The translations under genes were made by a program, and so were the position numbers. The notes under the pieces were generated by a model, which saw nothing but the letters and a program-made list of their open reading frames with translations, was not told the DNA's origin and did not search any database. From IMG/VR virus record IMGVR_UViG_3300027749_002876, positions 62,001 to 126,000 of that record: a DNA stretch of 64,000 nt; one strand, 5' to 3'. Below, piece by piece: positions 36,097 through 60,359 of the stretch (positions are counted from its first letter, which is position 1; the number at the start of each line of letters is the position of its first letter).

Positions 36097-36151
36097 TCCT
36101 TTTCTTTACTGTCTAAGATTCTATTATAGCACCAAACCGATTTATTGTCAA
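36097..36151 (-). promoter_or_regulatory. Early promoter cassette
   Basis: Reverse complement TTGACAATAAAT...TATAATAGAATCTTAGACAGTAAAGAAAAGGA. Confidence 0.9.
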
Positions 36152-36156
36152 CCTTT

Positions 36157-36330
36157 TTACGAATTGACTGTCCTAAAAGGGCTCAATTCCTCAGCATCAG
36201 AATGAATACTTTCTACTACATCATAGACAAAGAACACCGGAACATCAAGGACCGCGGAGATAGTTGCCGGATGTGTGCCTTTTTCAAGCATGTCCTCAAT
36301 CTCCATATATAAGTCTGCCATTTTACTCAT
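36157..36330 (-). CDS. Hypothetical protein, 57 aa (MSKMADLYMEIEDML...), not in the ORF track
   Basis: Coupled to the upstream ORF. Confidence 0.65.
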   Translation of the reverse strand: MSKMADLYMEIEDMLEKGTHPATISAVLDVPVFFVYDVVESIHSDAEELSPFRTVNS

Positions 36331-36542
36331 TTTGTATTACTCACATTAGATTTAAACAAAAAACCACACAATACTGTCAAGCCCCAGGCTTGGAGCCAAG
36401 TAACCTGAGAGACACCTTGAACAGCGCCAACCAAACAACCATTCCATAGCATGTAGACAGGCCAACTCAATAGAAAACTGAGGGCTAGAATACCTACAAT
36501 ACTAACAACGATTGTACCAATAGCAAGAGAGATTGCTTTCAT
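36327..36542 (-). CDS. Small membrane protein
   Basis: AAGGA SD; LWN......I.WLQA.GL. Confidence 0.7.
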   Translation of the reverse strand: MKAISLAIGTIVVSIVGILALSFLLSWPVYMLWNGCLVGAVQGVSQVTWLQAWGLTVLCGFLFKSNVSNTK

Positions 36543-36552
36543 AATTGTTCCT

Positions 36553-36768
36553 TTAACTAATAGCATGTTCAACCGGAACCGAAGTGACCTCATGCCAAAA
36601 CTGATCCCAGTAAGTGTTACTGACATTTTCAAAACGAATAAACATAGATTTTTCTGCCATGTTAACTGAAGTTCCCTTCAGCAATTCCCTTAACAATTGA
36701 CGCCTGCATTTACTTACAGTGGGTTCCCAATTGTCTCTGTTCGGACGAACATAGAAATATTGTGCCAT
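36553..36768 (-). CDS. Hypothetical protein
   Basis: AAGGA SD. Confidence 0.6.
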   Translation of the reverse strand: MAQYFYVRPNRDNWEPTVSKCRRQLLRELLKGTSVNMAEKSMFIRFENVSNTYWDQFWHEVTSVPVEHAIS

Positions 36769-36778
36769 TTTAAATTCC

Positions 36779-37066
36779 TTAAATAACAGTTAACATACTA
36801 GCAGGGACGCGCCAGTTTGTAGCAATGAATCCGGGGTTGTTCTCACGTACAATTACGAACTTACGATTTACCTTTTCAACATTACCAATCACAGTCACAC
36901 CTGAGCGTGAATTAGTGAATTTTACTTTGGAACCTTTACCCATGGCCATTTTGTTTTGGGCCGCAAGTTGTGCTCGGGCAAATTTAATCGCATCACCAAT
37001 ACTATTCAATTCTTCACTAGTGAAACGACCGTGAATGATAGCAGTATTAACTTCTTTGATGTTCAT
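36779..37066 (-). CDS. SH3-like hypothetical protein
   Basis: G.KVKF...G.VEKVNRK...WRVPASML; promoter at 37096-37124. Confidence 0.7.
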   Translation of the reverse strand: MNIKEVNTAIIHGRFTSEELNSIGDAIKFARAQLAAQNKMAMGKGSKVKFTNSRSGVTVIGNVEKVNRKFVIVRENNPGFIATNWRVPASMLTVI

Positions 37067-37128
37067 GTGAACTCCTTTTGATTGAATAAGACTCTATTAT
37101 AGACCCAAACTGATTTATTGTCAACCTT

Positions 37129-37302
37129 TTAGTAGGTTTCTTTAATGATTTGGAATTTATCTTCTGGATACTTTTCCACAAACTCCGGTGTTTTGATGTA
37201 GTCATTCAATTCTTTTGCATTGAAAAACATTTTGGTGAAAACACTGGTATGTGATCCTTTTGGACAAACCGTGAGATACATTGATTTTGCTTTACCTGCC
37301 AT
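37129..37302 (-). CDS. Hypothetical protein, 57 aa (MAGKAKSMYLTV...), not in the ORF track
   Basis: Promoter at 37336-37364 and AAGGA SD. Confidence 0.7.
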   Translation of the reverse strand: MAGKAKSMYLTVCPKGSHTSVFTKMFFNAKELNDYIKTPEFVEKYPEDKFQIIKETY

Positions 37303-37360
37303 TTTGTAGTCCTTTAGTTAACTGTCTAAGATTGTATTATATACCCAAATTAATTTATTG

Positions 37361-37516
37361 TCAAATTTCGGTGCGATTTGGATGTTTAGATTTACGTTGA
37401 TAGCCCGTTTTGGGCTTAGCAACCTTAGGTTTAAACGGGGTGTTCTCACAGAAAAGAACACGGTGAGCCCTGTGTTTGGGTTCTTTAACAGTGAAGGATA
37501 GTATTTCTCTTTTCAT
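37361..37516 (-). CDS. Small basic protein, probably leaderless
   Basis: PFKPKV..K..YQRK.KH; ATG 7 nt after TATAAT. Confidence 0.6.
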   Translation of the reverse strand: MKREILSFTVKEPKHRAHRVLFCENTPFKPKVAKPKTGYQRKSKHPNRTEI

Positions 37517-37548
37517 AACCCATATTATAGCATGAGTCTTATTTATTG

Positions 37549-38877
37549 TCAACCTAAATTTTTAAGTTCTGTACTGATGGATTCTAGCACATTGTCCCAT
37601 GTTCCATTTGTCTGACGGAATAGTCTCATGCAATCATAGAATGGGCTATCGTTACGATTCATAAACCAACGCCAATCACACCCGTAATCAGTTAACATCA
37701 CCCAAGTGGGAACTCCCATTGCACCACTCAGGTGAGGGATAACTGTATCAATTGATATCACCAAATCTAGTTGGCTAATTAATCCTGCTGTATTGTAAAA
37801 GCCAGTTAAGTTTTCATGGAATGTTTTGACATTATACTTTGCTAATGTCTCCAATATTTGTTCATCCACTTCATATGATAGACTAATAAATTCATAATCA
37901 TCATTTGTTATTGATAATAATTGTTCTAATTCAATTCTACGGAAGCGTGATATGAATGCAATCTTATTTGGACTAGACAATAATCCAATTCGTTTTTTAG
38001 TCTTGGGGCCTAACAATTGTTTCCACAACTGTTTCATACCTTCATCTACATCTAAATAAGGAGTAGAATAAGGGATCGTATCAATGGTTGTACTAAAACA
38101 TTTTGGTATATCCATCAATGCAACATGATAGTGATATGGTGGTATCTGTGCGTCAGCATTTAGTACAGTCAAGTCAGGCAAGTTATATTTAAACAAATCA
38201 TACAATTGTGGTTTGGTTATAACTGTTACTTCTGCACCCTTGTCTTTTAATTGTTTTGCAAAACGAATAAATTGAACACTATCACCAAATCCCTGTTCAT
38301 AGTATACGAGAACTTTCTTACCTATAATATCTTGTGATCCATCATATTCTGGCCCGGGCAAGTTAGGCTTAAGGCTTATGTCGCTTTGATAATACCAACG
38401 TGCTTCATACTTCTTCCAACCTTCAATCAAATCACCTTTCATTAAATGACTAACTGATTCGTTTAACTCATAGTTAACATTATTAGGAGTGAGACCTTGT
38501 GCTATTTGTAAAAAAGGAATAGCAAGTTCAGGTAATCCAAACTCACGCAAGGTGTTGCCGTAATTACTGTATGCTGTTGAATGTTTGGGGTCGAGAGCAA
38601 AGGTGTGTGCAAATGTAATTAATGCTTCCCTATAATGTCCCAAACTGCGTAATGCTGTTCCTCTACTTAGCCAACTTTCAACATAGTTATGACTGCATGG
38701 TAATTCAAAGCATTCTAATGCTTCTACATCTCTACCTAACTGTGATAGTGTAATGCCAAGATTATGCCACACTATATAATTCTGTGGCTCTTGTTCTAAA
38801 AATCTTCTGTAACATTCACTGGCTTCGTGATACTCTTTAGCCATGTAGTGAATGTTACCTTGTTCAAAGTCGTTCAT
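37549..38877 (-). CDS. TPR-repeat glycosyltransferase (GT9-like C-terminus)
   Basis: TPRs; EGW..YE.RW, EQGFGD..QF.RF, TA.LI..LDLVISIDT...HL.GA.G.PTW, W.W..R.DSP.Y..RLFRQ. Confidence 0.9.
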   Translation of the reverse strand: MNDFEQGNIHYMAKEYHEASECYRRFLEQEPQNYIVWHNLGITLSQLGRDVEALECFELPCSHNYVESWLSRGTALRSLGHYREALITFAHTFALDPKHSTAYSNYGNTLREFGLPELAIPFLQIAQGLTPNNVNYELNESVSHLMKGDLIEGWKKYEARWYYQSDISLKPNLPGPEYDGSQDIIGKKVLVYYEQGFGDSVQFIRFAKQLKDKGAEVTVITKPQLYDLFKYNLPDLTVLNADAQIPPYHYHVALMDIPKCFSTTIDTIPYSTPYLDVDEGMKQLWKQLLGPKTKKRIGLLSSPNKIAFISRFRRIELEQLLSITNDDYEFISLSYEVDEQILETLAKYNVKTFHENLTGFYNTAGLISQLDLVISIDTVIPHLSGAMGVPTWVMLTDYGCDWRWFMNRNDSPFYDCMRLFRQTNGTWDNVLESISTELKNLG

Positions 38878-39164
38878 TCTATCGTAAAATTAACTTGTTT
38901 AACTTTCTTGATAGTGAAGCTACGCCACTCTTTTTTCTCTAAATCAAATACACGCATACTTGTAGCTGATTCTTTGCGTGGTTTTGCATCCTCTTTGATT
39001 TCAACCTTAGGTAATTGGTTTGGCACTAGAGTACATTTCATTACACGCTCAGTACCATCTGATTTGGTGAATGTCACTGTACCTTCACTTACTCGCAACA
39101 TACCACTTAACCATTCAGTAAACTTGTCCCAATCTTTATCGGTCCATTCTGTGGTGATGTTCAT
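38874..39164 (-). CDS. WYL-like SH3-fold phage protein
   Basis: VTFTK.DGTERVMKCTL...VFDL.K.EWRSF. Confidence 0.75.
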   Translation of the reverse strand: MNITTEWTDKDWDKFTEWLSGMLRVSEGTVTFTKSDGTERVMKCTLVPNQLPKVEIKEDAKPRKESATSMRVFDLEKKEWRSFTIKKVKQVNFTIE

Positions 39165-39484
39165 TTTGTCATTCCTAAAATAGTTTTTGCTCTAGCAACG
39201 AGTTCATCATCACTATCATCAAAAGTGTAACCTTCTTCAATTAACTTAAGAGTGTAGTATTTGTTGAAGAACAATCCAAATACTACTGCGGTGATAATCC
39301 AAAAGGGCAAAGTTAACACATGAATGATTAAACATATTAGTGTGATTAGCAATTCACCTCGATATAGAGGAACTAACCATCCCATATTAAAGATACCTAA
39401 TAAAAAGTAGCTGTAACTAAAACCTATGTATCCATCTTTAGTGATACCGGTTTTCTTGTTTATCATTTTAATTGCAGTTGTCAT
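39161..39484 (-). CDS. Membrane protein
   Basis: GFS...F...W.VPL.RG...N..Y...L...GY. Confidence 0.65.
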   Translation of the reverse strand: MTTAIKMINKKTGITKDGYIGFSYSYFLLGIFNMGWLVPLYRGELLITLICLIIHVLTLPFWIITAVVFGLFFNKYYTLKLIEEGYTFDDSDDELVARAKTILGMTK

Positions 39485-39771
39485 TATGTCATCATCCTTA
39501 TTAATCCTATACTATCAATGGACACTAGCAGTAGATAGTTAGCCAGCATGCCAAAAGATTTCCTAGTCCAACTAGCCCAAGCATACAAAGCACAACCAGT
39601 AATCCAAATGGGATAAAGAGCAAGAAGCGGAGGAGTGGGGACTGTAACCGCCATAGTAATACTGCATCCAATACTAATAGCCCATGCAAGAAGCTCAATA
39701 GCAAAGCGAATTCTGTTAGACTTAAAGTCATCTTTTATCCACGAAAAAATACCATAAAAAATATCGTTCAT
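39484..39771 (-). CDS. Membrane protein, probably leaderless
   Basis: Three hydrophobic segments; ATG 6 nt after TATAAT. Confidence 0.7.
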   Translation of the reverse strand: MNDIFYGIFSWIKDDFKSNRIRFAIELLAWAISIGCSITMAVTVPTPPLLALYPIWITGCALYAWASWTRKSFGMLANYLLLVSIDSIGLIRMMT

Positions 39772-39816
39772 ACGTGTATTATAACATAATGAACGATATT
39801 GTACAAGTTACTTTGG

Positions 39817-40134
39817 TCACTGATTACAGGTTCGTGTACGAGTAATAGTGCCATCTGAGTTTTGTGTTTCAGTCCATGGGGTACAGTTTTGATTTTGTTG
39901 AACTATAACAGGCTGTTGTTGCTGTACAACTACTGGAGGTTGCTGAACAACTACTGGTCGATTATAGATATCATAAATTACTGCTCCAGCTAGTGCGCCG
40001 CCGAGTACAGGTCCCCAGCCCCAACCACCGCCACGATAACCACCGTGACCATAATGTCCGTGATGACCATAATGCTGTGCTGATGCTGAACCAGCTAGTA
40101 AAATCAATGATATTGCTAATATAACTTTTTTCAT
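39817..40134 (-). CDS. Secreted Gly/His/Gln-rich protein
   Basis: Signal peptide; AGGAG SD. Confidence 0.7.
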   Translation of the reverse strand: MKKVILAISLILLAGSASAQHYGHHGHYGHGGYRGGGWGWGPVLGGALAGAVIYDIYNRPVVVQQPPVVVQQQQPVIVQQNQNCTPWTETQNSDGTITRTRTCNQ

Positions 40135-40166
40135 AACTATCTCCTGTGTTATACTTATATAACGTG

Positions 40167-40700
40167 TCAGACCAATGATTCGTTGACACGGTGACTGTCG
40201 ATTGCCTCTTGTAAAACAAACTCTATCATCTTATTTAGTGTAATGTCACGCTTGTGCGCTTCCTTGGCTAAATGAAGTATTAGGTCATCATCCAAATCAA
40301 CTTCTATTTGTACACGGGTATCCCAATACTCACCGTTGAACATTGCTTTTGCTTTTTCTAGGAAATCTTCTTCTACATCCAGATCAATCCACTTAACATC
40401 ATCCCATGCCTGATCGGGATCGACATTGCGTTCTGTTGCTTCATTAAGGTAAGCATCTTTAAACAAAGCATTTGTCCAACGATAGGGCTTATCATAGCGT
40501 TCGTCATTGGGCCAAGCATCACGTTTAAGTGAGGCGTCAGCCTGGTATACAGTTTGATCTACAGTACTATACAATACACTAACGTGACCATAGTCACTTT
40601 CATAGTCTAAGAATCGTGCATCAGGAAAGCATTGCCATTGATATTCAGAACCACCGGTGATTTGGTGATTCATTGCTTCGTTAATCTGGTTCAATTTCAT
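40167..40700 (-). CDS. Hypothetical protein with C-terminal ribbon-helix-helix-like segment
   Basis: EAHKRDITLNKMIE..L. Confidence 0.7.
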   Translation of the reverse strand: MKLNQINEAMNHQITGGSEYQWQCFPDARFLDYESDYGHVSVLYSTVDQTVYQADASLKRDAWPNDERYDKPYRWTNALFKDAYLNEATERNVDPDQAWDDVKWIDLDVEEDFLEKAKAMFNGEYWDTRVQIEVDLDDDLILHLAKEAHKRDITLNKMIEFVLQEAIDSHRVNESLV

Positions 40701-40908
40701 GTGTGTCTTTCAAAATTTTAATACATTGTTTTTTGATATGTTCCGGAATAGAATGTAACCGTAATAATATCTCACATTTATAACTAACAGTAATAGTTGG
40801 TTCTTCGATTTCAGGTTCTTCTAAAATCATCCAACCAAAGATCACTATTGCTATGATTATAGCAAGAATTCTCTTAACTGTCAACTCATATTTTTCCCAA
40901 AGACTCAT
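40681..40908 (-). CDS. Small membrane protein
   Basis: TM segment; ATAAATA-5-ATG. Confidence 0.55.
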   Translation of the reverse strand: MSLWEKYELTVKRILAIIIAIVIFGWMILEEPEIEEPTITVSYKCEILLRLHSIPEHIKKQCIKILKDTHEIEPD

Positions 40909-40942
40909 ATCGTTATTTATGAGTCCTCTGAGATATTGCTAA

Positions 40943-41236
40943 TTAATCACCCGAATCAATTTGATATCTGTCACCGCAATGTTTACAAGTGTAGCCGGTC
41001 AAGCATCTGCCGTCTGATTTGGTTGTGTAATGATGGTTGCACGGTGCACCTTCGGCATTCAATCGTACTTCACCCTTAGGGGATCCATACATATACTGTC
41101 CACCGCAGTTATGACAACCACGTTGTGTCTTATCTTTATTCCAAGAATAAGCTTTTTCTTGTTCCGTCAAATTGACATAACAAGTCCCGTTACATACAGG
41201 ACATACTCCATATCCATCTCTCATACTAAAATCCAT
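40943..41236 (-). CDS. Zinc-finger protein
   Basis: CPVCNG, CHNCGG, C.H, CKHCG. Confidence 0.7.
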   Translation of the reverse strand: MDFSMRDGYGVCPVCNGTCYVNLTEQEKAYSWNKDKTQRGCHNCGGQYMYGSPKGEVRLNAEGAPCNHHYTTKSDGRCLTGYTCKHCGDRYQIDSGD

Positions 41237-41308
41237 CCTTTAAAATTATTGCCAGACCCATCACAATGACGGGTAACATTACGATAATCAAGTTAGTAAT
41301 TGCTTGCA

Positions 41309-41647
41309 TTATTTTACTCCAAATGTGTTCAATGCTGGTTGCAATGTGTTAATCAATAGTGTTTCACGCTCATGAGCAGGGCGCTTGCCACGCACAACTT
41401 CCAACTTACCGAACACAAAACGCTCGGCACCACGCTCACGCAAAGCACGAGACAGGCCCCAGTTTTTGTTCTCAGTCATAGCCCGTTGCATATGTTTTTG
41501 CATACGACGGCGTAGTGTCAAAAACACATTGCCTTTGTATGAAAGAGCAGTCAAACCAATGTAGTACTCAAGTGTTACAGTATCTTGGATAAAGTAGATA
41601 ACTTGATTTCTATCAGTTCTACGCTTGCGGACGATTTTCGAGTTCAT
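41309..41647 (-). CDS. GIY-YIG-like nuclease domain protein, probably leaderless
   Basis: VIY.I......YYIG.T...R...H...E...I....P.LN; promoter at 41654-41682. Confidence 0.7.
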   Translation of the reverse strand: MNSKIVRKRRTDRNQVIYFIQDTVTLEYYIGLTALSYKGNVFLTLRRRMQKHMQRAMTENKNWGLSRALRERGAERFVFGKLEVVRGKRPAHERETLLINTLQPALNTFGVK

Positions 41648-41684
41648 AAGTGTATTATATACCCAAATTGATTTATTGTCAACC

Positions 41685-41909
41685 TCAGAATGCTCGGTAC
41701 AATCCAAGCATACAAATAACAACTGATACGATATTCACTACCATTTGTGCATTGTTGCGAACCCGGTAAGCCCATGTAAGAAAGAATACAGTTCCAAAAC
41801 TGAATGCTATAATGTTATATGGATCCATATTGCCCATCGAGTTCAGGATATGACCTGCTATGATGAAAACTACCCCTGTCCACTGAATGATGTCATTTGT
41901 TTTATTCAT
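41685..41909 (-). CDS. Small membrane protein, probably leaderless
   Basis: ATG 6 nt after TATAAT. Confidence 0.65.
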   Translation of the reverse strand: MNKTNDIIQWTGVVFIIAGHILNSMGNMDPYNIIAFSFGTVFFLTWAYRVRNNAQMVVNIVSVVICMLGLYRAF

Positions 41910-41915
41910 AGATGA

Positions 41916-42060
41916 ATTATACACTAAAGCCCATTTATTGTCAACTGTTGGTAAAATCGCTAGAAGTGTATCAGAGTGCGTTCCTGAATCCTCTAGCGAT
42001 TTTGAAGCCCCTGAGGGGGCAAAAGTAGTACTTTTGTTTCTTAAATATGTAGTACTAAAG
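41916..42060 (-). repeat. Non-coding element, copy B (inverted relative to copy A), ending in an early promoter
   Basis: AAAATCGCTAGA...TCTAGCGATTTT 12-bp inverted repeat at 41953-42003; GCCCC-TGA-GGGGGC. Confidence 0.9.
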
Positions 42061-51021: not shown

Positions 51022-51046
51022 AAATAGACCCCGAAAGGTCTATTTT
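51022..51046. terminator. Bidirectional terminator
   Basis: AAAATAGACC-CCGAAA-GGTCTATTTT. Confidence 0.8.
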
Positions 51047-51647
51047 ACATTGTGGGGCCGTTCCCACTTTTGAATCCAACTGAACCGCCTTCTGCCTCGA
51101 TACGTTTGATAACGTCTTCAAACAGGATAGGTGTAAAATCTGTTTGTTCAACACATACACAATGATAACGAACATCGTTTTCATCACTGTATAATGTTAC
51201 ACCTGTCTTAGCGTCAATACCTCTAGCTTTTTTCACTCTATTAGAATGTAAGTGGCCATGAATGTTGACACCAAAACGTCCTAATGATGCCTCATGTAAC
51301 GGGATGTGACTTAAAATCATACCGTTCATTACATGATACGCACGTAATTCACGGAAGTATAATCTATACTCATCATCACGAAAGATATCGTGGTTACCAC
51401 GAATCAATACCTTGTCACCGTTTAAGCGACTCAACGTAATTAATGACTTGCGGTTAATAACTACGTCACCTAAGTGATATACTTTGTCATTTGGACGAAC
51501 TCGGTCGTTCCAACGCTTAATCATTTCCTCATCCATCTCATGTGGATCAGTCCATGGACGAATCTTTGTAACACCGTCTGCTTCGGTGAATCTGCACACG
51601 CCGGCATGACCAAAGTGGGTGTCACTCGTTAAAAATACTGCTGGCAT
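51045..51647 (-). CDS. Calcineurin-like phosphoesterase
   Basis: SDTHFGH, HLGD, GNHD, SH.P, HGHLH. Confidence 0.9.
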   Translation of the reverse strand: MPAVFLTSDTHFGHAGVCRFTEADGVTKIRPWTDPHEMDEEMIKRWNDRVRPNDKVYHLGDVVINRKSLITLSRLNGDKVLIRGNHDIFRDDEYRLYFRELRAYHVMNGMILSHIPLHEASLGRFGVNIHGHLHSNRVKKARGIDAKTGVTLYSDENDVRYHCVCVEQTDFTPILFEDVIKRIEAEGGSVGFKSGNGPTM

Positions 51648-51862
51648 TATACCCTCTCTTTCTTTACTCGTCCGATGCGTGACGTTTTGTTCCAATCATA
51701 AGCGATGCCATCCGGACACTTACCATCACGCACACTGTCTACACCAAACATACCGCATACTTCGAATCCGTCTCCTATGATAGAAATGAATTCGTTTAAT
51801 GACTTAGCATAATCCATTGCTGAATTTAAGTCTACAAATTCTAATTCTTTTACTTTAAACAT
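51647..51862 (-). CDS. Hypothetical protein
   Basis: AAGGA SD. Confidence 0.65.
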   Translation of the reverse strand: MFKVKELEFVDLNSAMDYAKSLNEFISIIGDGFEVCGMFGVDSVRDGKCPDGIAYDWNKTSRIGRVKKERV

Positions 51863-51871
51863 TTTATTCCT

Positions 51872-52180
51872 TTACGCAACCATCCAGTGGTCGCTTTCTT
51901 TGTATTCGATGGATTCGGCACCATCATATTCATTTATTTTGAATTCTGTTCCTACCGGCATCCATTCTACTTCTAAATCTTTCATACCACCGGTGTAGAT
52001 ATCTGGATACTTCAATGCTACATATGTTGCCAATTCATCCCATTTTTCCTTTTCAACAAACTTTACGATTGCTGGATCAAAAAGAATTTCAGGACATTCA
52101 TAGTTCCATGTGTACCATCCTGCACCGAAGCCAGGACTATACAACACTGCCACCTTACCATCTTCATTTAACTTGTTCAT
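51872..52180 (-). CDS. Conserved phage hypothetical protein
   Basis: VAVLYSPGFGAGW.TWN, F.I.EYDG.E. Confidence 0.75.
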   Translation of the reverse strand: MNKLNEDGKVAVLYSPGFGAGWYTWNYECPEILFDPAIVKFVEKEKWDELATYVALKYPDIYTGGMKDLEVEWMPVGTEFKINEYDGAESIEYKESDHWMVA

Positions 52181-52641
52181 TCTATTCTCTTAAAAGATCG
52201 CCAATCATCAATGTTTGGCTTTTCATCTTCATCATATGTCCAACCTAATGCCTTCATCATACGATGTTTGACAAGTAAGTTAGGGCTACGCCATCTTCCT
52301 ACGTCTTCAAACCCCATCATAACACCAACTTCGCATACTGCACCACTACGGCATACACCTGCAAAACAATGAACAACCACGTTCATTCTATTTTCTTTGG
52401 CATGTTGCAATAGTCTAACCAATTCGTTTGCTTGTTCTTGACTGCAACGCATTGCTTCATCTAAAGCAAAATCATTCTTCTCAATGTCCAAGAATTCAAA
52501 ATTGTGAATCTCTTTGAATTTGTGAGCAGGTGTTGGTCTCCAACTCGCAGGGTCTGTGATGCTAATCAGCATACTATTCTCTCCGGCTTCATGATGAAAT
52601 CTAGTAGGTATATCAGCGGCTGCTACATTTTCAATCCACAT
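52177..52641 (-). CDS. Protein-tyrosine/dual-specificity phosphatase-like protein
   Basis: VVHCFAGVCRS (CX5R). Confidence 0.85.
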   Translation of the reverse strand: MWIENVAAADIPTRFHHEAGENSMLISITDPASWRPTPAHKFKEIHNFEFLDIEKNDFALDEAMRCSQEQANELVRLLQHAKENRMNVVVHCFAGVCRSGAVCEVGVMMGFEDVGRWRSPNLLVKHRMMKALGWTYDEDEKPNIDDWRSFKRIE

Positions 52642-53265: not shown

Positions 53266-53287
53266 AAAAGGTCGTTAACGACCTTTT
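53266..53287. terminator. Terminator at the distal end of the tRNA array
   Basis: AAAAGGTCG-TTAA-CGACCTTTT. Confidence 0.8.
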
Positions 53288-53292
53288 GTTTT

Positions 53293-53368
53293 TGGCATCC
53301 CGGGTAAGCCTCGAACTTACAACCCCTGGTTTTGGAGACCAGTGCTCTGCCAATTGAGCTACCGAGAT
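53293..53368 (-). tRNA. tRNA-Trp(CCA)
   Basis: Cloverleaf, encoded CCA end. Confidence 0.93.
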
Positions 53369-53375
53369 ATATTCT

Positions 53376-53597
53376 TTATGCGTTTTTTCTAATACGCTTG
53401 AGGTATTCTCTACCCACAAGTCCTGCTTCAATTTCTTGAAGTGCAGTCACAATAGGACCTGCTTTAGAGACTAGTGTAGAACGATGTCCACGCTTTAACT
53501 CTCTTACTCTATGTGAAGCGATAAGAACTAAATCAAATCGATTACCAACCATATTAACGGCGTCTTCACTTGTATATCTTGCTCTGCTTTCAGTCAT
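53376..53597 (-). CDS. rpoZ: RNA polymerase omega subunit
   Basis: AR.T.EDA...VGNRFDLVLIAS.R.REL...TAL.EI..G. Confidence 0.9.
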   Translation of the reverse strand: MTESRARYTSEDAVNMVGNRFDLVLIASHRVRELKRGHRSTLVSKAGPIVTALQEIEAGLVGREYLKRIRKNA

Positions 53598-53608
53598 TTT
53601 CTTCCTTT

Positions 53609-54208
53609 TTAAAATTCAAACATTAATCTTTTCATTGTCTCAAAATAAATTTTAGGTCTTAATGCTAATGCAGGCCTTAATGTTAATACAACTCTTTCAT
53701 TATCTGATTGTGAATTATCCCAATCGTGAAATATTTCGGTATTAAACAATATTGCTTCATTGGGCTGAGCCACCATTGATTTAACCGGGGAGTGTTTAGT
53801 TTTATCAAATCCAACACATTCCCTTGATCCATTATGTTTAGGATCGATTTCATACATAGATAAATCTTCATCACTATACCAGCTGGTCACACACTTATCA
53901 TCTAATATTTTAGAAGTATAATTTATACTAACATGGTCAAATGATCCGTCTTTATGAGCCCTATATGTCATATGCGGCTTTGATATGAATAACGATACCC
54001 GATCAATTTCTAATGGTGGAAATTTTAAGGGAATCATACTCAGCATTTTTTTAGATTCATCTGGCTGTAATTTATAATGAGTAAAATCTTCATTTATCTT
54101 ATAAATATCCGGGGTGATTACATTGCAATAATCTATTATAGACTGTATACCGGCGTGAGTATATCTAATATAATAAGGACTACAATCTTCAATGATTTCG
54201 TATTTCAT
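53609..54208 (-). CDS. Fe(II)/2OG oxygenase- or cupin-like protein
   Basis: AHKD...LFNT...H...N...R..L..R. Confidence 0.6.
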   Translation of the reverse strand: MKYEIIEDCSPYYIRYTHAGIQSIIDYCNVITPDIYKINEDFTHYKLQPDESKKMLSMIPLKFPPLEIDRVSLFISKPHMTYRAHKDGSFDHVSINYTSKILDDKCVTSWYSDEDLSMYEIDPKHNGSRECVGFDKTKHSPVKSMVAQPNEAILFNTEIFHDWDNSQSDNERVVLTLRPALALRPKIYFETMKRLMFEF

Positions 54209-54210
54209 GC

Positions 54211-54864
54211 TTACTCTAAAAATAATAGGTTGTTATTTTTAAATACATCTCTCCAGTATCCTGTGTTAGGTATCAGAGCCCATAATTTAGTATTTTCAAA
54301 AACTATCAATGTTCTATTTTTTTTTGTTTGATTTAATGCGACCGCAACCCCATTAAACCAGGGATGAAAATCATCTCCTAGTAATAATCCGGTATCGGAT
54401 TCATACTTTTCAATATCATGTTTAACATCCAATAATGTATGTGAAGCATCAATAAAGGTAAGATCGTAATGTTTTACTTTCTCAAAATCTTTGCTAGAAG
54501 TAGGGTGTACATTTATATTAGCATACATTTCTTCACCTATACAAAATCTAAATGCATCATGCCATCCTGTAGCTTTTGCAATTTCTCTTGCATCAGCATA
54601 CATAATAGGATCGCCTAGTGCAAATTGCAAATTTTCAAACTCAATATTTAATAATGATTGGCTAGAAACAATTCTAAAATTATCAACTATATCCATGCTT
54701 ACAGAAGAATTTTTACCTCTATAGAGGGCAGTAGTAGAACTACCCAAAAAACAACCTATTTCTAAAATAGAACCATTATCAGGAACATAACCAGCCAATG
54801 TTGAAAGAATTATTAATTCTTTTTCGAGCATCCAACCCGGAATGTTTACATTGTATTTTTGCAT
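54211..54864 (-). CDS. Class I SAM methyltransferase
   Basis: PGWM, LEIGC..GSST, FIDASH, GDD. Confidence 0.85.
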   Translation of the reverse strand: MQKYNVNIPGWMLEKELIILSTLAGYVPDNGSILEIGCFLGSSTTALYRGKNSSVSMDIVDNFRIVSSQSLLNIEFENLQFALGDPIMYADAREIAKATGWHDAFRFCIGEEMYANINVHPTSSKDFEKVKHYDLTFIDASHTLLDVKHDIEKYESDTGLLLGDDFHPWFNGVAVALNQTKKNRTLIVFENTKLWALIPNTGYWRDVFKNNNLLFLE

Positions 54865-54884
54865 ATTGTATTTATGTTTATATT

Positions 54885-54960
54885 TGGAGCGGGAAATCGG
54901 GTTCGAACCGACGACATTCACGTTGGCAACGTGATGCTCTACCAACTGAGCTATTCCCGC
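54885..54960 (-). tRNA. tRNA-Gly(GCC)
   Basis: Cloverleaf. Confidence 0.95.
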
Positions 54961-54967
54961 ATATTCT

Positions 54968-55042
54968 TGGTACATCGACACGGTTTCGAACCGCGGACCC
55001 TCTCCGTGTAAAGGAGACGCTCTACCCCTGAGCTATCGATGC
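54968..55042 (-). tRNA. tRNA-Val(TAC)
   Basis: Cloverleaf. Confidence 0.95.
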
Positions 55043-55052
55043 ATATTTTTAT

Positions 55053-55232
55053 TTAACCCCCTTGAGAGCTGTCTTTAACTTCTGTTTCTCTAGCAATTTT
55101 TTCAAACGCTTCATCTTCATTCTTTTGATCCTCAATCATTCTTGGATCAGGCTTACGAAAGATTTTGTCATAGTTGTTTGCATATTCTTGTTGACTGACA
55201 CTGTATGGTCTTGGACTAGAACCTTTGCTCAC
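55053..55232 (-). CDS. Small protein, 59 aa (MSKGSSPRPYSVSQQEY...DKIF), GTG start, not in the ORF track
   Basis: GTGA overlap with the upstream ORF. Confidence 0.6.
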   Translation of the reverse strand: MSKGSSPRPYSVSQQEYANNYDKIFRKPDPRMIEDQKNEDEAFEKIARETEVKDSSQGG

Positions 55233-56516: not shown

Positions 56517-56605
56517 GTTATAATATAACACACTACGAATCTCCTTCTAAGTTATGGACCTAGCGAGTACTCCAGTTGTGTTCATGTAATGTGTTATATT
56601 ATAAC
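56517..56605 (-). ncRNA. Candidate small RNA / 16-bp inverted repeat overlapping a promoter -10
   Basis: GTTATAATATAACACA/TGTGTTATATTATAAC; TTGACA-17-TATAAT at 56598-56626. Confidence 0.5.
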
Positions 56606-56690
56606 ATATATCTATTTATATGTCAACTATCTTTGGATAAGAAGAACTCAGACGTATGATAACCATTTACCGGTTAGTTATTACAGAGGT

Positions 56691-58056: not shown

Positions 58057-58102
58057 AAATCTTGTTACTATTATATATCATAATAGATTTGTTGTCAATG
58101 AA

Positions 58103-58319
58103 TTTGTAAGTAGTATCACCATCGTTATTGATACCATTCACCCGTGTAATAAAGTCGACCGGGACTCGGTACGCTACTTGGGATTCATCCAGCTGATACG
58201 CCATCATGTATGCCGATCCCACTCAAGCGATCAGCCGGGCATCGAACCCGCAACCTTCTACTAACTCAGTCCTTCGAAGAAACCTCATTAGCGTGACTTC
58301 ACTTGCTAACACTTACAAA
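58103..58319 (-). ncRNA. Candidate ~215-nt structured RNA
   Basis: 9-bp closing stem TTTGTAAGT/ACTTACAAA; internal T-arm-like CGGG-UUCGAUG-CCCG. Confidence 0.6.
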
Positions 58320-58320
58320 A

Positions 58321-58860
58321 CTATTTTTTCCACCACCAAACCAATCGTTCAACTGTTGGAAAATTTTTATTGATATCTAAAACAATTGGTTTACAAACTG
58401 ATAAGTTCAACTTATTAGTCCATTCATAAAATGTTTTATAACTTAATCTATGTTTAGTACCAAAATTAGATATATGATCTTCATTATGACCTATATAATC
58501 TAAAAATGGTTGCATTCTTACTACAATATATCCACCGGGCTTGATCCAACTTACAATTTTTTCTACATCATAGAATTGATTTTCTACGGGTTTATATTGT
58601 ATGGAACCTAAACAAAGTGCGATATCTATTGATTCTTTTTCAAAGACGACATCATTTACTGAAGCCTGCATATCACTATTTGGATATGGATCAGCGTCAA
58701 AGCCAATCAAATTATGTATTTTGTCCTTGAAAAGATTTTCCCCACATCCCACATCAATTACTTTTTGCGGAAATAAGGAATTTACCTCTTCAATTAAATT
58801 GTAACCTGAATATGTGAATCCACGCATTCTAGTATCATTGTAAATATAAGCTTCATTCAT
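58321..58860 (-). CDS. Class I SAM methyltransferase (paralogue of the C-terminal part of 50287-51015)
   Basis: SG..L.EEVN...P.KVIDVGCG.N.FK..I.NLIG.D, CLGSI. Confidence 0.8.
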   Translation of the reverse strand: MNEAYIYNDTRMRGFTYSGYNLIEEVNSLFPQKVIDVGCGENLFKDKIHNLIGFDADPYPNSDMQASVNDVVFEKESIDIALCLGSIQYKPVENQFYDVEKIVSWIKPGGYIVVRMQPFLDYIGHNEDHISNFGTKHRLSYKTFYEWTNKLNLSVCKPIVLDINKNFPTVERLVWWWKK

Positions 58861-58875
58861 GAAGATATTTATCGA

Positions 58876-58950
58876 TGGCGACTCGTGGGAGAATCGAACT
58901 CCCGTAATCGGATAGACAATCCGAAGTAATGACCATTATACGAACGAGCC
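58876..58950 (-). tRNA. tRNA-Asp(GTC)
   Basis: Cloverleaf. Confidence 0.93.
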
Positions 58951-59034
58951 TAAATTAGTAGTAGTTTCTATATCACCCATTGAAACTAATAAACATTGAG
59001 AAAGAGCTTGCGTAGCAAGATTTCTATTTGTTCT

Positions 59035-59118
59035 TGGTGGAGACGGTTGGAGTTGAACCAACAGTGCCGAAGCGGAAGATTTACAGTCTCCTGGGGTTAC
59101 CAATTTTCCTACATCTCC
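59035..59118 (-). tRNA. tRNA-Tyr(GTA)
   Basis: Cloverleaf with variable arm. Confidence 0.93.
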
Positions 59119-59119
59119 A

Positions 59120-59325
59120 AATTAGGATAAGCTACTTGTTTCCACACAAGCCCTTAATTGAGCGGTTACTCTGTCCATCTCTTTTATTCTATATGTCTGT
59201 GTGCAGAGAGATACTGCCTATCAGAGTCTGCCGGGGTAGTTTCCATCCCTGCTTTTACGGTTTTCTGCCACCGGATCTCTATCGCTAATCAAACGCTACT
59301 TTGACGAAAGTAGTAACGGGATTCT
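59120..59325 (-). ncRNA. Candidate ~200-nt structured RNA between tRNA-Glu and tRNA-Tyr
   Basis: Hairpins CUACUUU-CGUC-AAAGUAG and CUUGU-GUGGAA-ACAAG; no credible ORF. Confidence 0.55.
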
Positions 59326-59326
59326 T

Positions 59327-59401
59327 TGGAAGAGCTACGGGGAATCGAACCCCGCTTGCCTGGATGAAAACCAGATGTCCTAACCGATAGACGATAGCTC
59401 C
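59327..59401 (-). tRNA. tRNA-Glu(TTC)
   Basis: Cloverleaf. Confidence 0.93.
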
Positions 59402-59402
59402 A

Positions 59403-59530
59403 TGTTATTAGTTTTGCTGACGCACTGTTTGCTATGCTCAACGGAATTGCCAGCTGGACGTACCGTTTATATACATAGTTACTCAGGGTTGACGTTTCCC
59501 CCATGGCTTACATCAGCAAAACTAATAACA
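59403..59530 (-). ncRNA. Candidate ~128-nt RNA closed by a perfect 18-bp stem
   Basis: TGTTATTAGTTTTGCTGA/TCAGCAAAACTAATAACA. Confidence 0.65.
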
Positions 59531-59767
59531 CTCTATATGAAAACACATTATGGGAACTACATTCGTCTGTCCAGGACCGTCTCCTGTACCCCGGCTTGTA
59601 CACCGGGAACTCTGAACTTCGTCATTACTGCCTAACTGCCCGTCACGTTCATAACTTTCGTTATCATACGCTTCATGATGTATGTCTTGGCGTGTATCCG
59701 TCGATACCCTTATAACCTTCGTACACCCTAACGGATCAGGTAACCCTTAATATGTTTACATATAGAG
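59531..59767 (-). ncRNA. Candidate ~237-nt RNA with a ~20-bp closing stem
   Basis: CUCUAUAUGUAAACAUAUUA/UAAUGUGUUUUCAUAUAGAG; internal CCCGG..CCGGG. Confidence 0.6.
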
Positions 59768-59800
59768 CCCTGAACTTAACAGGGATATATGAATTCTAAA

Positions 59801-59957
59801 TTTTAAAGAACTCTTGCAACTACTCTATCGTTTGTTGCTATGTGTCTATTATAACACCTTTACCATTTATTGTCAAATTCTTTTTTGTGTCTCTGTGTCC
59901 GAGAACTTGTTCAATCAATCTAAGTATCTATTATAGCACCAACTTGATTTATTGTCA
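59801..59957 (-). promoter_or_regulatory. Tandem sigma70 promoters plus boxA-like antitermination site
   Basis: Two TTGACAATAAAT..TATAAT promoters ~80 bp apart; AGTTCTTTAAAA at 59812-59801. Confidence 0.7.
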
Positions 59958-59993
59958 AACTTTGTGTTGTTGTATTTTTACAACACCTGTTAT

Positions 59994-60068
59994 TGGTCCG
60001 GCGTAAGGGAATCGAACCCCTATAAACACTTTAGAAGAATGTTGTCCTATCCGTTGAACGAACGCCAG
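59994..60068 (-). tRNA. tRNA-Arg(TCT)
   Basis: Cloverleaf. Confidence 0.92.
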
Positions 60069-60139
60069 ATATATTTCTTACTTGTCTCTATTATAGAGGA
60101 TTGTTGATTTGTTGTCAAGTTTGACAACAACTATTTGAA

Positions 60140-60215
60140 TGGCTCCTCAAGATGGGATCGAACCACCGACATTCTGATTAACAGTCAGACGCAACTACCG
60201 CTGTGCTATTGAGGA
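60140..60215 (-). tRNA. tRNA-Asn(GTT)
   Basis: Cloverleaf. Confidence 0.95.
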
Positions 60216-60222
60216 ATATTTT

Positions 60223-60298
60223 TGGTGCCCACACCATGATTCGAACACGGCACCTACGCATTACAAGTGCGTTGCTCTACCAAATGAGCTATGTGGGC
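60223..60298 (-). tRNA. tRNA-Thr(TGT)
   Basis: Cloverleaf. Confidence 0.95.
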
Positions 60299-60359
60299 TT
60301 GTGTCTTACGACATGTTTATTTAACAGCTATTGTATCATAGGAAAACTTTTATGTCAAC

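What the first reader, a model, noticed from the sequence alone, without database searches (positions are those of the whole stretch)
53376..53597. RNA polymerase omega subunit encoded in the tRNA region
Seen: a short 73-aa RpoZ starting MTESRARYT rather than the usual MARVT. Established: the omega N-terminus forms part of ppGpp site 1 in proteobacterial RNAP. Inference: swapping omega could blunt stringent control and keep the phage's rrn-like tRNA promoters active in starved hosts.
Basis: partly seen in the sequence, partly recalled or inferred. Interest (0 to 1): 0.6.

Follow-up and report, generated by a model that had tools for sequence, protein, structure and literature searches.

The report
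Phage-encoded RNA polymerase omega subunit
A widespread group of ~350-kb freshwater phages that have no RNA polymerase of their own carry a well-conserved copy of its smallest subunit (omega), with a short extra N-terminal piece, inside a tRNA operon; this suggests the phage adds its own part to the host's transcription machine.

Summary
Window 53376-53597 (minus strand) encodes a 73-aa protein starting MTESRARYT. It passes the curated cut-offs of Pfam PF01192 and TIGR00690 (rpoZ), and its model matches omega chains of solved RNAPs. It sits 7 nt upstream of tRNA-Trp at the end of a tRNA array.

It is not contamination. More than 400 relatives (72-100% identical) occur in freshwater metagenomes, on phage contigs of up to 348-364 kb, and 89 sampled loci share the synteny. 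Median dN/dS is 0.13. The extension M-[TS]-[EQ]-S-R before A-R-Y-T is conserved. The nearest cellular omega found is 55% identical, and all those extracted start MAR[VI]T.

The record has no detectable beta, beta', alpha, sigma70 region 2, Gre, DksA or RelA/SpoT gene, but it has 53 perfect sigma70 promoters (0.36 expected). So the phage uses host RNAP, and omega most likely joins it.

The site-1 residues are largely kept, and DksA site 2 dominates stringent control. The phage tRNA promoters are not rrn-like: they have a consensus 17-nt spacer and A/T-rich discriminators.

The 524-kb record looks chimeric, so its "two copies" are orthologs. I found no published description of a phage omega.

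The parts
53376..53597 (-). rpoZ-like CDS, 73 aa plus stop: phage omega subunit homolog with the conserved N-terminal extension MTES-R ahead of A-R-Y-T
53601..53607 (-). Shine-Dalgarno-like AAGGAAG, 3 nt before the ATG. The ATG lies 11 nt after the stop of the upstream ORF
   Evidence: read directly from the sequence
53293..53368 (-). tRNA-Trp(cca), starting 7 nt after the rpoZ stop. It follows rpoZ within 3-7 nt in 50 of 89 related loci
53266..53287 (.). Terminator-like hairpin just after tRNA-Trp, called on the + strand (9 pairs, then a T-run). On the rpoZ strand the same hairpin is followed by only four T. Probable end of the tRNA-rpoZ transcription unit
53609..54208 (-). 199-aa ORF directly upstream of rpoZ. 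Virus-only hypothetical family, faint 2OG-Fe(II) oxygenase lead. Present between tRNA-Gly and rpoZ only in some relatives
54211..54870 (-). Methyltransferase-like ORF (Methyltransf_24, 24 bits, below the cut-off of 26.3). The longer ORF call to 54981 reads into tRNA-Gly
54885..55042 (-). tRNA-Gly(gcc) 54885-54960 and tRNA-Val(tac) 54968-55042. In 53 of 89 relatives one of these ends 14-27 nt before the rpoZ ATG
56598..56626 (-). Perfect sigma70 consensus promoter TTGACA-N17-TATAAT, 83 nt before tRNA-Leu(tag). It is the nearest strong promoter upstream of rpoZ, with no minus-strand terminator-like site in between. It is conserved in relatives
58070..60358 (-). Five further consensus promoters inside the tRNA array: 58098-58070, 59876-59848, 59958-59930 and 60118-60090 (all 12/12), and 60358-60330 (11/12)

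Best explanation
This is a functional omega (RpoZ) subunit gene carried by a clade of ~350-kb freshwater tailed phages that have no RNA polymerase of their own and transcribe from dozens of perfect sigma70-type promoters.

Expression (inferred): the gene is made as a distal cistron of a tRNA operon, in the order consensus promoter, tRNA-Leu(tag) ... tRNA-Val, tRNA-Gly, rpoZ, tRNA-Trp, hairpin. Its mRNA would be released by tRNA processing.

Action (inferred): the protein binds the host beta' subunit at the normal omega site, supplementing or replacing host omega. Host RNAP therefore stays fully omega-loaded, meaning correctly assembled, stable and processive, while it serves phage promoters.

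N-terminal extension (inferred): the conserved M-[TS]-[EQ]-S-R lies at the ppGpp site-1 pocket and probably changes how that pocket behaves. The direction of the change is unknown.

Shown: family membership, fold, conservation, purifying selection, synteny, phage context, lack of detectable phage RNAP genes, and the sigma70-type promoters.
Inferred: binding to host beta', co-transcription with the tRNAs, and any effect on RNAP.
For: Family and fold.
Core residues shared with cellular omegas (R7, F21, L25, A27, R30, R32, G37, A52, L53, E55).
Clade-wide presence: 407 relatives on contigs up to 358,771 bp; 103 IMG/VR contigs, including 348,701, 352,012 and 364,247 bp.
Purifying selection: median dN/dS 0.131 over 59 unique CDS with dS about 1.
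Extension conserved and in frame in all 89 loci.
Synteny inside the tRNA operon.
No match at E<=0.01 for beta' (PF04997), beta (PF00562), alpha (PF01000), sigma70 region 2, Gre, DksA/TraR or RelA/SpoT in the record.
53 perfect TTGACA-N17-TATAAT sites against 0.36 expected, six of them in the window's tRNA array.
Complex prediction with E. coli beta' 335-660 and 1131-1407 plus ppGpp: weak support, ipSAE 0.56, best of 3 controls 0.00. The mark was reached by 58 of 80 solved complexes and 2 of 110 mismatched pairs, but at 0.60 or under by only 7 of those 80 and by both mismatches that passed. Runs agree in at least 68% of contacts and partner pLDDT is at least 70. My own alignment and a riding ligand were used, so the counts hold only roughly, and the pass may come from memory of solved RNAPs.
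Host hint: a betaproteobacterial-type tmRNA (RF01850, 95.4 bits, gathering 84) in the related genome of the same record, and beta-like middle and C-terminal parts of the protein.
Omega roles in E. coli: site 1 (PMC7676912); stabilising the elongating RNAP (preprint PMC13192885).
Against: There is no direct evidence that the protein is made or that it enters RNAP. The only runs labelled metatranscriptomic are flagged as probably DNA. The complex prediction is only a weak pass against E. coli beta' fragments, not the real host. The host is unknown: a 5-kb phage-like contig is binned in a Sediminibacterium (Bacteroidota) MAG, which conflicts with a proteobacterial host if taken at face value. Omega is dispensable in E. 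coli, so the benefit of an extra copy is not obvious. Whether resident omega exchanges on assembled RNAP is not known to me. Very divergent phage RNAP subunits (phiKZ-type) could escape the Pfam models used.
Confidence: 0.6

Rival explanations
1. One reading: phage omega replaces host omega and disables ppGpp site 1, making RNAP less sensitive to the stringent response so that phage tRNA and other promoters stay active in starved hosts.
For: Omega residues 2-5 coordinate the ppGpp phosphates, and omega lacking residues 2-5 abolishes site-1 binding (PMC7676912). The phage protein buries the A-R motif behind four extra residues, so the free N-terminus is displaced. The extension is conserved under selection. 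Oligotrophic lakes make starved hosts likely.
Against: The A-R-Y-T equivalents are retained and an extra invariant Arg is added. Position 3 is E or Q, so an acidic 'phosphate mimic' is not conserved. Site 2 with DksA dominates, and delta-rpoZ has a modest phenotype (PMC7676912). Phage promoters are consensus with A/T-rich discriminators, a type expected to be ppGpp-insensitive anyway. No phage DksA/TraR or RelA/SpoT homolog accompanies it.
Confidence: 0.13
2. The opposite tuning: the extra Arg-containing extension tightens or stabilises ppGpp binding at site 1. Host promoters with GC-rich discriminators (rRNA, tRNA) are then shut down more readily, and RNAP is freed for the phage's consensus promoters.
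For: R5 is invariant and S4 is conserved in 58 of 59 unique sequences, next to the retained R7. The site-1 pocket binds phosphates through basic residues (PMC7676912). The phage promoter architecture would be spared by ppGpp.
Against: This is purely inferential. Residues 1-10 are modelled at low confidence (pLDDT 54). The effects of site 1 alone are modest (PMC7676912).
Confidence: 0.1
3. The extension is a docking site: phage omega marks RNAP for another phage factor (for example a late-transcription or anti-termination protein) rather than acting by itself.
For: A conserved, probably flexible N-terminal peptide on the RNAP surface. These genomes are large and hold many unknown genes.
Against: No partner was identified. 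Neighbouring genes vary between relatives.
Confidence: 0.07
4. A recently captured host gene, bacterial contamination or an assembly artefact with no role in the phage.
For: rpoZ is a universal bacterial gene. The 524-kb record is itself chimeric. The rpoZ hits in the isolated-phage collection are bacterial DNA: Salmonella genome contigs, unannotated records, and an 'Acinetobacter phage' record with gmk-rpoZ-spoT beside pilus genes.
Against: The same gene and position occur in 89 loci from many samples and studies. dN/dS is 0.13 at dS about 1. Identity to 401 sampled Pseudomonadota genomes is at most 55%, and no close copy was found in 185,579 species' genomes except one phage-like contig. Both parts of the chimeric record are phage, and each carries the gene at the same place.
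Confidence: 0.03

Closest known systems
Bacterial RNA polymerase omega subunit, RpoZ (TIGR00690 / PF01192), of beta- and gammaproteobacteria
   Same: Same family by curated cut-offs, same helical fold, same invariant core residues. The length (73 aa) and the middle and C-terminal pattern resemble the short (66-67 aa) betaproteobacterial form. The N-terminal half (..AV..VGNRFDLVLIA) resembles the gamma form. The A-R-x-T motif of ppGpp site 1 is retained.
   Different: It is encoded by a phage with no detectable beta/beta' genes. It is at most 55% identical to any sampled cellular omega. It carries a conserved four-residue N-terminal extension and Y in place of V/I. It lies inside a tRNA operon instead of the gmk-rpoZ-spoT neighbourhood.
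Phage proteins that act on host RNAP (T4 AsiA, MotA, Alt/Mod, gp55/gp33; T7 Gp2; Xp10 P7): my knowledge, not tested here
   Same: The presumed purpose is the same: adapting host RNAP to phage transcription in a phage that depends on that enzyme.
   Different: Those proteins are unrelated to RNAP subunits. They bind, modify or replace sigma. This one is a homolog of a core subunit, so the proposed mode is subunit supplementation or replacement.
Virus-encoded multisubunit RNAPs (phiKZ/AR9-type jumbo phages; Rpb6 homologs of giant eukaryotic viruses): my knowledge plus PMC12619734
   Same: A virus carrying an RNAP-subunit homolog.
   Different: Those viruses encode the catalytic subunits too. Here omega is the only RNAP-core homolog found in the record.
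E. coli tufB operon (thrU-tyrU-glyT-thrT-tufB): my knowledge
   Same: A protein gene of the gene-expression machinery lies downstream of tRNA genes in one transcription unit, so its mRNA arises by tRNA processing.
   Different: Here a tRNA also follows the CDS within 3-7 nt, the promoters are consensus rather than stringent-type, and co-transcription is inferred rather than shown.
Translation-machinery genes in huge phages, such as ribosomal proteins, initiation and elongation factors and tRNA synthetases (PMC7162821)
   Same: The same logic: a large phage supplies a component of a host machine.
   Different: That survey lists translation components and RNA polymerases, and a text search of it found no mention of omega or rpoZ.

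Membership tests
RpoZ / RNA polymerase omega (PF01192, TIGR00690) | Score above the curated family cut-offs | tested here: met
   PF01192 47.5 bits (cut-off 26); TIGR00690 41.2 bits (cut-off 23.6)
RpoZ / RNA polymerase omega (PF01192, TIGR00690) | Omega fold (helical bundle as in solved RNAPs) | tested here: met
   AF2 pLDDT 80.4; helices 11-17, 20-35, 48-57, 64-72. The 50 listed Foldseek PDB hits are all omega chains; TM 0.7-0.78 for E. coli and Vibrio
RpoZ / RNA polymerase omega (PF01192, TIGR00690) | Conserved core residues shared with cellular omegas | tested here: met
   R7, F21, L25, A27, R30, R32, G37, A52, L53, E55 are invariant across 17 phage and 7 cellular sequences
RpoZ / RNA polymerase omega (PF01192, TIGR00690) | Binds beta' and is part of RNAP core | tested here: inconclusive
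   Complex prediction gave weak support: ipSAE 0.56, best control 0.00. The mark was reached by 58 of 80 solved complexes and 2 of 110 mismatches; at 0.60 or under by only 7 of the 80 and by both mismatches that passed. Runs agree in at least 68% of contacts; partner pLDDT at least 70. E. coli fragments were used, not the host. Needs biochemistry
RpoZ / RNA polymerase omega (PF01192, TIGR00690) | Usual proteobacterial gene neighbourhood (gmk-rpoZ-spoT) | tested here: not met
   The gene is flanked by tRNA genes in 89 loci. No RelA/SpoT homolog in the record. Compare the true bacterial context
ppGpp site-1-competent omega (proteobacterial type) | MAR motif at the very N-terminus (PMC6912228) | tested here: not met
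   The N-terminus is M-[TS]-[EQ]-S-R-[AVI]-R; A-R is internal at positions 6-7. All 20 nearest cellular omegas extracted start MAR[VI]T
ppGpp site-1-competent omega (proteobacterial type) | Residues equivalent to E. coli 2-5 that coordinate the ppGpp phosphates (PMC7676912) | tested here: inconclusive
   The equivalents A-R-Y-T are present, with R and Y invariant. Whether the extension allows, blocks or enhances binding cannot be told from sequence. Model confidence for residues 1-10 is low
Phage-encoded multisubunit RNAP (phiKZ/AR9 type) | Phage genes for beta and beta' homologs | tested here: not met
   No match to PF04997, PF00562 or PF01000 in the 524-kb record, while all 14 control genomes matched. 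Very divergent subunits could escape these models

The most novel reading that the evidence does not exclude
A viral 'subunit swap'. The phage installs its own omega in host RNAP, and the conserved N-terminal extension rewires ppGpp site 1. It either blinds the site or, more in keeping with the phage's consensus promoters with A/T-rich discriminators, sensitises it. In the second case the host's own alarmone shuts host rRNA and tRNA promoters and hands RNAP to the phage. This would be the first example of a phage reprogramming the stringent response by replacing a core RNAP subunit.
Probability: 0.2. Interest if true: 0.85.

Novelty: new variant of a known kind. Interest (0 to 1): 0.6.

Why it matters
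Phages are known to redirect host RNA polymerase with sigma factors, anti-sigma factors, inhibitors and covalent modification, or to bring a complete polymerase of their own. A phage that brings only omega would be a different strategy, for three reasons: the gene has been kept under strong purifying selection across a cosmopolitan freshwater clade, it is altered exactly at the end that lines the ppGpp site-1 pocket, and it is wired into a tRNA operon driven by consensus sigma70 promoters. It gives a natural variant with which to probe what omega and site 1 really do, still an open question in E. coli (PMC7676912; PMC13192885). It is directly testable with existing omega-less RNAP reconstitution assays. 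It also adds transcription-core components to the list of host-machine parts that huge phages carry.

Tried and rejected
1. Megablast of the locus against isolated phages: no match. tblastn of the protein found 8 records, none a credible phage omega: Salmonella genome contigs, short or unannotated records, and a mislabelled 'Acinetobacter phage' contig showing gmk-rpoZ-spoT among pilus genes.

2. PHROGs: no family for the protein.

3. 'Two paralogous copies in one 524-kb genome' was rejected. The record mirrors itself at about 80% aa identity, ends in a 4,089-bp direct repeat that defines a 347.5-kb unit, and relatives are 348-364 kb. So the two copies are orthologs from two related phages joined in one record.

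4. Expression evidence: no genuine RNA run holds the locus. Two runs labelled metatranscriptomic have contigs across rpoZ and tRNA-Trp, but they are flagged as probably DNA and cover neighbouring genes equally, so they were not used.

5. Naming the donor or host class from 401 Pseudomonadota genomes failed because the handles carry no taxonomy. Only the identity ceiling (55%) and the N-termini could be used.

6. The Sediminibacterium MAG hit is a 5-kb phage-like contig (tRNAs plus the same small conserved ORF). It is treated as a binning artefact or weak host hint only.

7. The longer 97-119-aa 'homologs' in databases are gene-caller read-through of the upstream tRNA gene, not fusions.

8. The general sigma70 promoter scan near the gene alone showed no enrichment (15 sites against 11.8 in shuffles). 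The signal appeared only when perfect matches were counted.

9. Literature searches for a described phage omega found nothing.

10. The family was not in doubt, and the pattern scan of 185,579 species' genomes already covers close cellular relatives.

Full report
**Observation.** The ORF at window 53376-53597 lies on the minus strand, and its coordinates include the TAA stop. It encodes 73 residues beginning MTESRARYT.
- It scores above the curated cut-offs of Pfam PF01192 (47.5 bits against 26) and of the NCBIfam equivalog TIGR00690 rpoZ (41.2 against 23.6).
- A sequence search of PDB chains returns only omega subunits, best for Vibrio cholerae and E. coli (E 2.7e-12 to 5e-11, residues 6-67).
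- An AlphaFold2 model built on a 24-row alignment has mean pLDDT 80.4, with helices at 11-17, 20-35, 48-57 and 64-72. The 50 listed Foldseek hits in the PDB are all omega chains within bacterial RNAP structures, with TM about 0.7-0.78 for the E. coli and Vibrio ones.
- Twenty-seven tRNA genes lie on the same strand between 53293 and 63157, and tRNA-Trp begins 7 nt after the rpoZ stop codon.
- Contigs identical to the window across the gene occur in two independent freshwater DNA runs.

**The N-terminus.** Phage A6-R7-Y8-T9 aligns with E. coli A2-R3-V4-T5.
- So the phage protein keeps the A-R-x-T motif. Residues M1-R5 stand where E. coli has only Met1, a net extension of four residues, and Tyr replaces Val.
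- Across 59 unique coding sequences from 89 loci the pattern is M-[TS]-[EQ]-S-R-[AVI]-R-Y-[TS]-S-E. R5, R7, Y8 and S10 are invariant, and S4 is conserved in 58 of 59.
- All 89 rpoZ-bearing loci keep this stretch in frame, so it is translated sequence and not leader.
- All 20 of the nearest cellular omegas that I could extract begin MAR[VI]T.

**The genome and the 'second copy'.** The window is bases 62001-126000 of a 524,565-bp IMG/VR virus record, which holds a second 73-aa RpoZ homolog that is 85% identical. The record has two tRNA arrays in mirror order, each ending rpoZ then tRNA-Trp.
- A self-comparison shows that bases 0-155 kb mirror 525-397 kb at about 75-90% nucleotide and about 80% amino-acid identity.
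- The last 4,089 bp repeat bases 172,924-177,012 at 99.6%, which defines a unit of 347,553 bp.
- Related complete-size contigs are 347.7, 348.7, 349.1, 352.0, 358.8 and 364.2 kb.
- I therefore read the record as one ~347.5-kb genome joined to a ~173-kb fragment of a related phage, and the window lies in that fragment. The two rpoZ genes are then orthologs, one per phage. This is an inference from sequence and was not checked with reads.

**Distribution and selection.**
- The word-index protein search found 407 relatives. The best 120 are 75-95% identical and mostly 70-73 aa.
- The longer 97-119-aa forms are gene-caller read-through of an upstream tRNA gene.
- IMG/VR holds at least 103 contigs with the gene.
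- The samples are freshwater lakes: a JGI lake sample that I recognise by its prefix as Lake Mendota, European lake series, and 18 studies of freshwater or lake metagenomes.
- Pairwise Nei-Gojobori dN/dS has a median of 0.131 (maximum 0.378) at a median dS of about 1.05. The two copies in the record give 0.167.
- In 50 of 89 loci tRNA-Trp(cca) follows the stop codon by 3-7 nt. In 53 of 89 a tRNA-Gly(gcc) or tRNA-Val(tac) ends 14-27 nt before the ATG. In all but two loci, where the contig starts too close to the gene, one of these tRNAs lies upstream.
- In the window, a methyltransferase-like ORF and a 199-aa ORF lie between tRNA-Gly and rpoZ. The ATG follows the 199-aa ORF's stop by 11 nt and has an AAGGAAG Shine-Dalgarno-like element.

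**Not a recent host gene, not contamination.**
- A pattern scan of one genome from each of 185,579 species found no close cellular copy. It returned only a 4,978-bp contig in a Sediminibacterium MAG, which is itself a phage-like tRNA region (69% identity), and a 40% match to an ordinary alphaproteobacterial rpoZ.
- Among 401 sampled Pseudomonadota genomes the best omega is 55% identical (54 bits).
- The protein looks like a mosaic. Its N-terminal half resembles the gamma type. Its middle and C-terminal parts resemble the short betaproteobacterial type: the G-H-x-P-K pattern, no two-residue insert, and an end near residue 70.
- Isolated phages have nothing comparable. There is no PHROG. The tblastn hits are Salmonella genome contigs, short or unannotated records, and a mislabelled 'Acinetobacter phage' record showing gmk-rpoZ-spoT.

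**The phage uses host RNAP.**
- The record gave no match at E<=0.01 to beta' (PF04997), beta (PF00562), alpha (PF01000), sigma70 region 2, GreA/B, DksA/TraR or RelA/SpoT. The control genomes did match.
- A MazG-like gene is present.
- The record contains 53 perfect TTGACA-N17-TATAAT sites against 0.36 expected from base composition. They share an extended consensus: an A-tract, TTGACAATAAAT, then TATAAT followed by A-G-A.
- Five perfect sites and one 11/12 site lie on the tRNA strand inside the window's array. Several sit 14-83 nt ahead of a tRNA.
- The nearest one upstream of rpoZ is at 56626-56598, ahead of tRNA-Leu(tag). No minus-strand terminator-like site was found between it and rpoZ, and a hairpin follows tRNA-Trp.
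- A conserved version of this promoter lies upstream of rpoZ in many relatives: 47 of 89 loci have a site of at least 11/12 within the fetched flank.
- Co-transcription of rpoZ with the tRNAs is thus likely but not shown. The runs labelled metatranscriptomic are flagged as probably DNA.

**Host.** Two hints point to a betaproteobacterial host. The related genome in the same record carries a permuted tmRNA that passes the gathering score of Rfam beta_tmRNA (RF01850, 95.4 bits against 84, full model). The omega protein also has beta-like features. In that group the MAR/site-1 type of omega is expected (PMC6912228). The Sediminibacterium bin is a conflicting but weak hint.

**Binding.** I ran a complex prediction of the phage protein with E. 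coli beta' residues 335-660 and 1131-1407, with ppGpp riding along. It gave 'weak support'.
- ipSAE was 0.56 (runs 0.52, 0.58, 0.56), and the best of 3 controls was 0.00.
- By the tool's calibration the mark was reached by 58 of 80 solved complexes and 2 of 110 mismatched pairs. At 0.60 or under it was reached by only 7 of those 80, and by both mismatches that passed.
- The runs agree in at least 68% of contacts, and partner pLDDT is at least 70.
- My own alignment and a ligand were used, so the counts hold only roughly. The pass may reflect memory of solved E. coli RNAPs. No contacts were given.
- I count this as mild support for what homology already suggests.

**Mechanism.** Published work shows that omega residues 2-5 help coordinate the ppGpp phosphates at site 1, and that omega lacking residues 2-5 abolishes site-1 binding. 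It also shows that site 2 (DksA) has the much larger effect on transcription, and that delta-rpoZ cells show only a modest downshift lag (PMC7676912). A recent preprint reports that omega stabilises the elongating enzyme and raises processivity (PMC13192885).

1. The site-1 residues are kept, and an invariant Arg is added.
2. Site 2 would remain.
3. The phage promoters are the opposite of rrn P1. They have perfect hexamers, a 17-nt spacer and A/T-rich discriminators (27% GC over 8 nt against 37% for the genome; A, G, A in the first three positions in 46, 31 and 41 of 53 sites). From established promoter kinetics (my knowledge: Haugen et al. 2006; Gourse et al. 2018) such promoters form long-lived open complexes and are little affected by ppGpp.

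My best reading is that the phage supplies omega so that the host RNAP it depends on stays fully assembled, stable and processive. The conserved extension would modify the site-1 pocket in a direction that only an experiment can tell. If anything, the promoter architecture fits a sensitising effect, which would divert RNAP from host stable-RNA promoters, at least as well as a blinding one.

**Novelty.** I found no paper describing a phage-encoded omega in five full-text searches and in the main jumbo- and huge-phage surveys. Automatic annotation at JGI already names these proteins. The protein is a clear member of the omega family, but in a new setting and with a clade-specific N-terminus. I rate it a new variant of a known kind.

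Noticed in passing
whole record G000 (window = bases 62001-126000); join near record bases 172,450-172,930: The 524,565-bp 'virus genome' looks like a chimera. Bases 0-155 kb mirror 525-397 kb at about 80% aa identity. The last 4,089 bp repeat 172,924-177,012 at 99.6%, which gives a 347.5-kb unit plus a ~173-kb fragment of a related phage. Relatives are 348-364 kb.
   Followed up: partly
window 56598-56626, 58070-58098, 59848-59876, 59930-59958, 60090-60118, 60330-60358 (minus strand); also 10980, 11310, 11541, 12137, 12474, 12820, 27444 (+) and 36151-41944 (-): The record has 53 perfect TTGACA-N17-TATAAT promoters (0.36 expected). They share an extended motif (A-tract, TTGACAATAAAT, TATAAT-AGAATCTTA) and often lie about 25-35 nt ahead of an SD and ATG. 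This looks like a phage promoter class for host sigma70 RNAP.
   Followed up: partly
G000:C1:288480-288896 (minus strand), outside the window; L127 703-1105: A phage-encoded permuted tmRNA with tag ANDSQFSIAA. It scores above gathering for Rfam beta_tmRNA (RF01850) and tmRNA_permuted (RF04321). This hints at a betaproteobacterial host.
   Followed up: partly
window 23631-24905 (+) and 22803-23621 (+): A 424-aa ORF resembling Na+/H+ dicarboxylate-glutamate symporters (about 25% identity to GltT, GltP and DctA), and its 272-aa neighbour. They are 96-98% identical between the two phage parts but sit at a different place in the other genome (280-283 kb), which suggests a recently moved cassette.
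   Followed up: no
window 55053-55232 (minus strand); L002 1011-1190; L011 3519-3707: A small conserved ORF of about 59 aa (MSKGS.PRP.SV ... IFRKPDPR.IED..NE.EAF) embedded between tRNA genes in both phage parts and in the divergent MAG contig. No Pfam match.
   Followed up: no
window 51045-52641 (minus strand): Just downstream of the tRNA-rpoZ unit lie a dual-specificity phosphatase-like ORF (52177-52641; Y_phosphatase just over its cut-off, DSPc below) and a calcineurin-like metallophosphoesterase (51045-51695). The phosphatase is also conserved next to the array in relatives.
   Followed up: no
window 53609-54208 (minus strand); L011 2067-3522: The 199-aa ORF directly upstream of rpoZ belongs to virus-only hypothetical clusters, with a faint 2OG-Fe(II) oxygenase / Asp-Arg hydroxylase lead (0.89, a lead only). 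By eye, ORFs in the MAG contig carry similar H.D...H motifs.
   Followed up: partly
L125 (G000:C1:15001-34900), just upstream of the window: A T4-type family-B DNA polymerase (phrog_262) next to a GTP cyclohydrolase / QueD / QueE module, which suggests 7-deazaguanine modification of DNA or tRNA.
   Followed up: no
public databases (P0004-P0009, P0020, P0041 and others): Many database entries for this omega are 97-119 aa because gene callers started inside the upstream tRNA gene. Length filters and N-terminal analyses on such entries would mislead.
   Followed up: yes
INPHARED records CAKLQH020000003.1 / CAKLQF020000004.1 (L128), and AFYI01000003.1, AGRM01000003.1: Records filed as phage are bacterial chromosome: gmk-rpoZ-spoT, pilus genes and transporters in the 'Acinetobacter phage' records, and Salmonella genome contigs. 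Hits to them are not phage genes.
   Followed up: yes
L011 = JBBAJX010000055.1 (Sediminibacterium sp. MAG, 4,978-bp contig): This contig is a fragment of a more divergent member of the phage clade (tRNA-Trp, Val and Gly, the small conserved ORF, and a 69%-identical omega with a two-residue insert). It is probably mis-binned, or else a weak host hint.
   Followed up: partly
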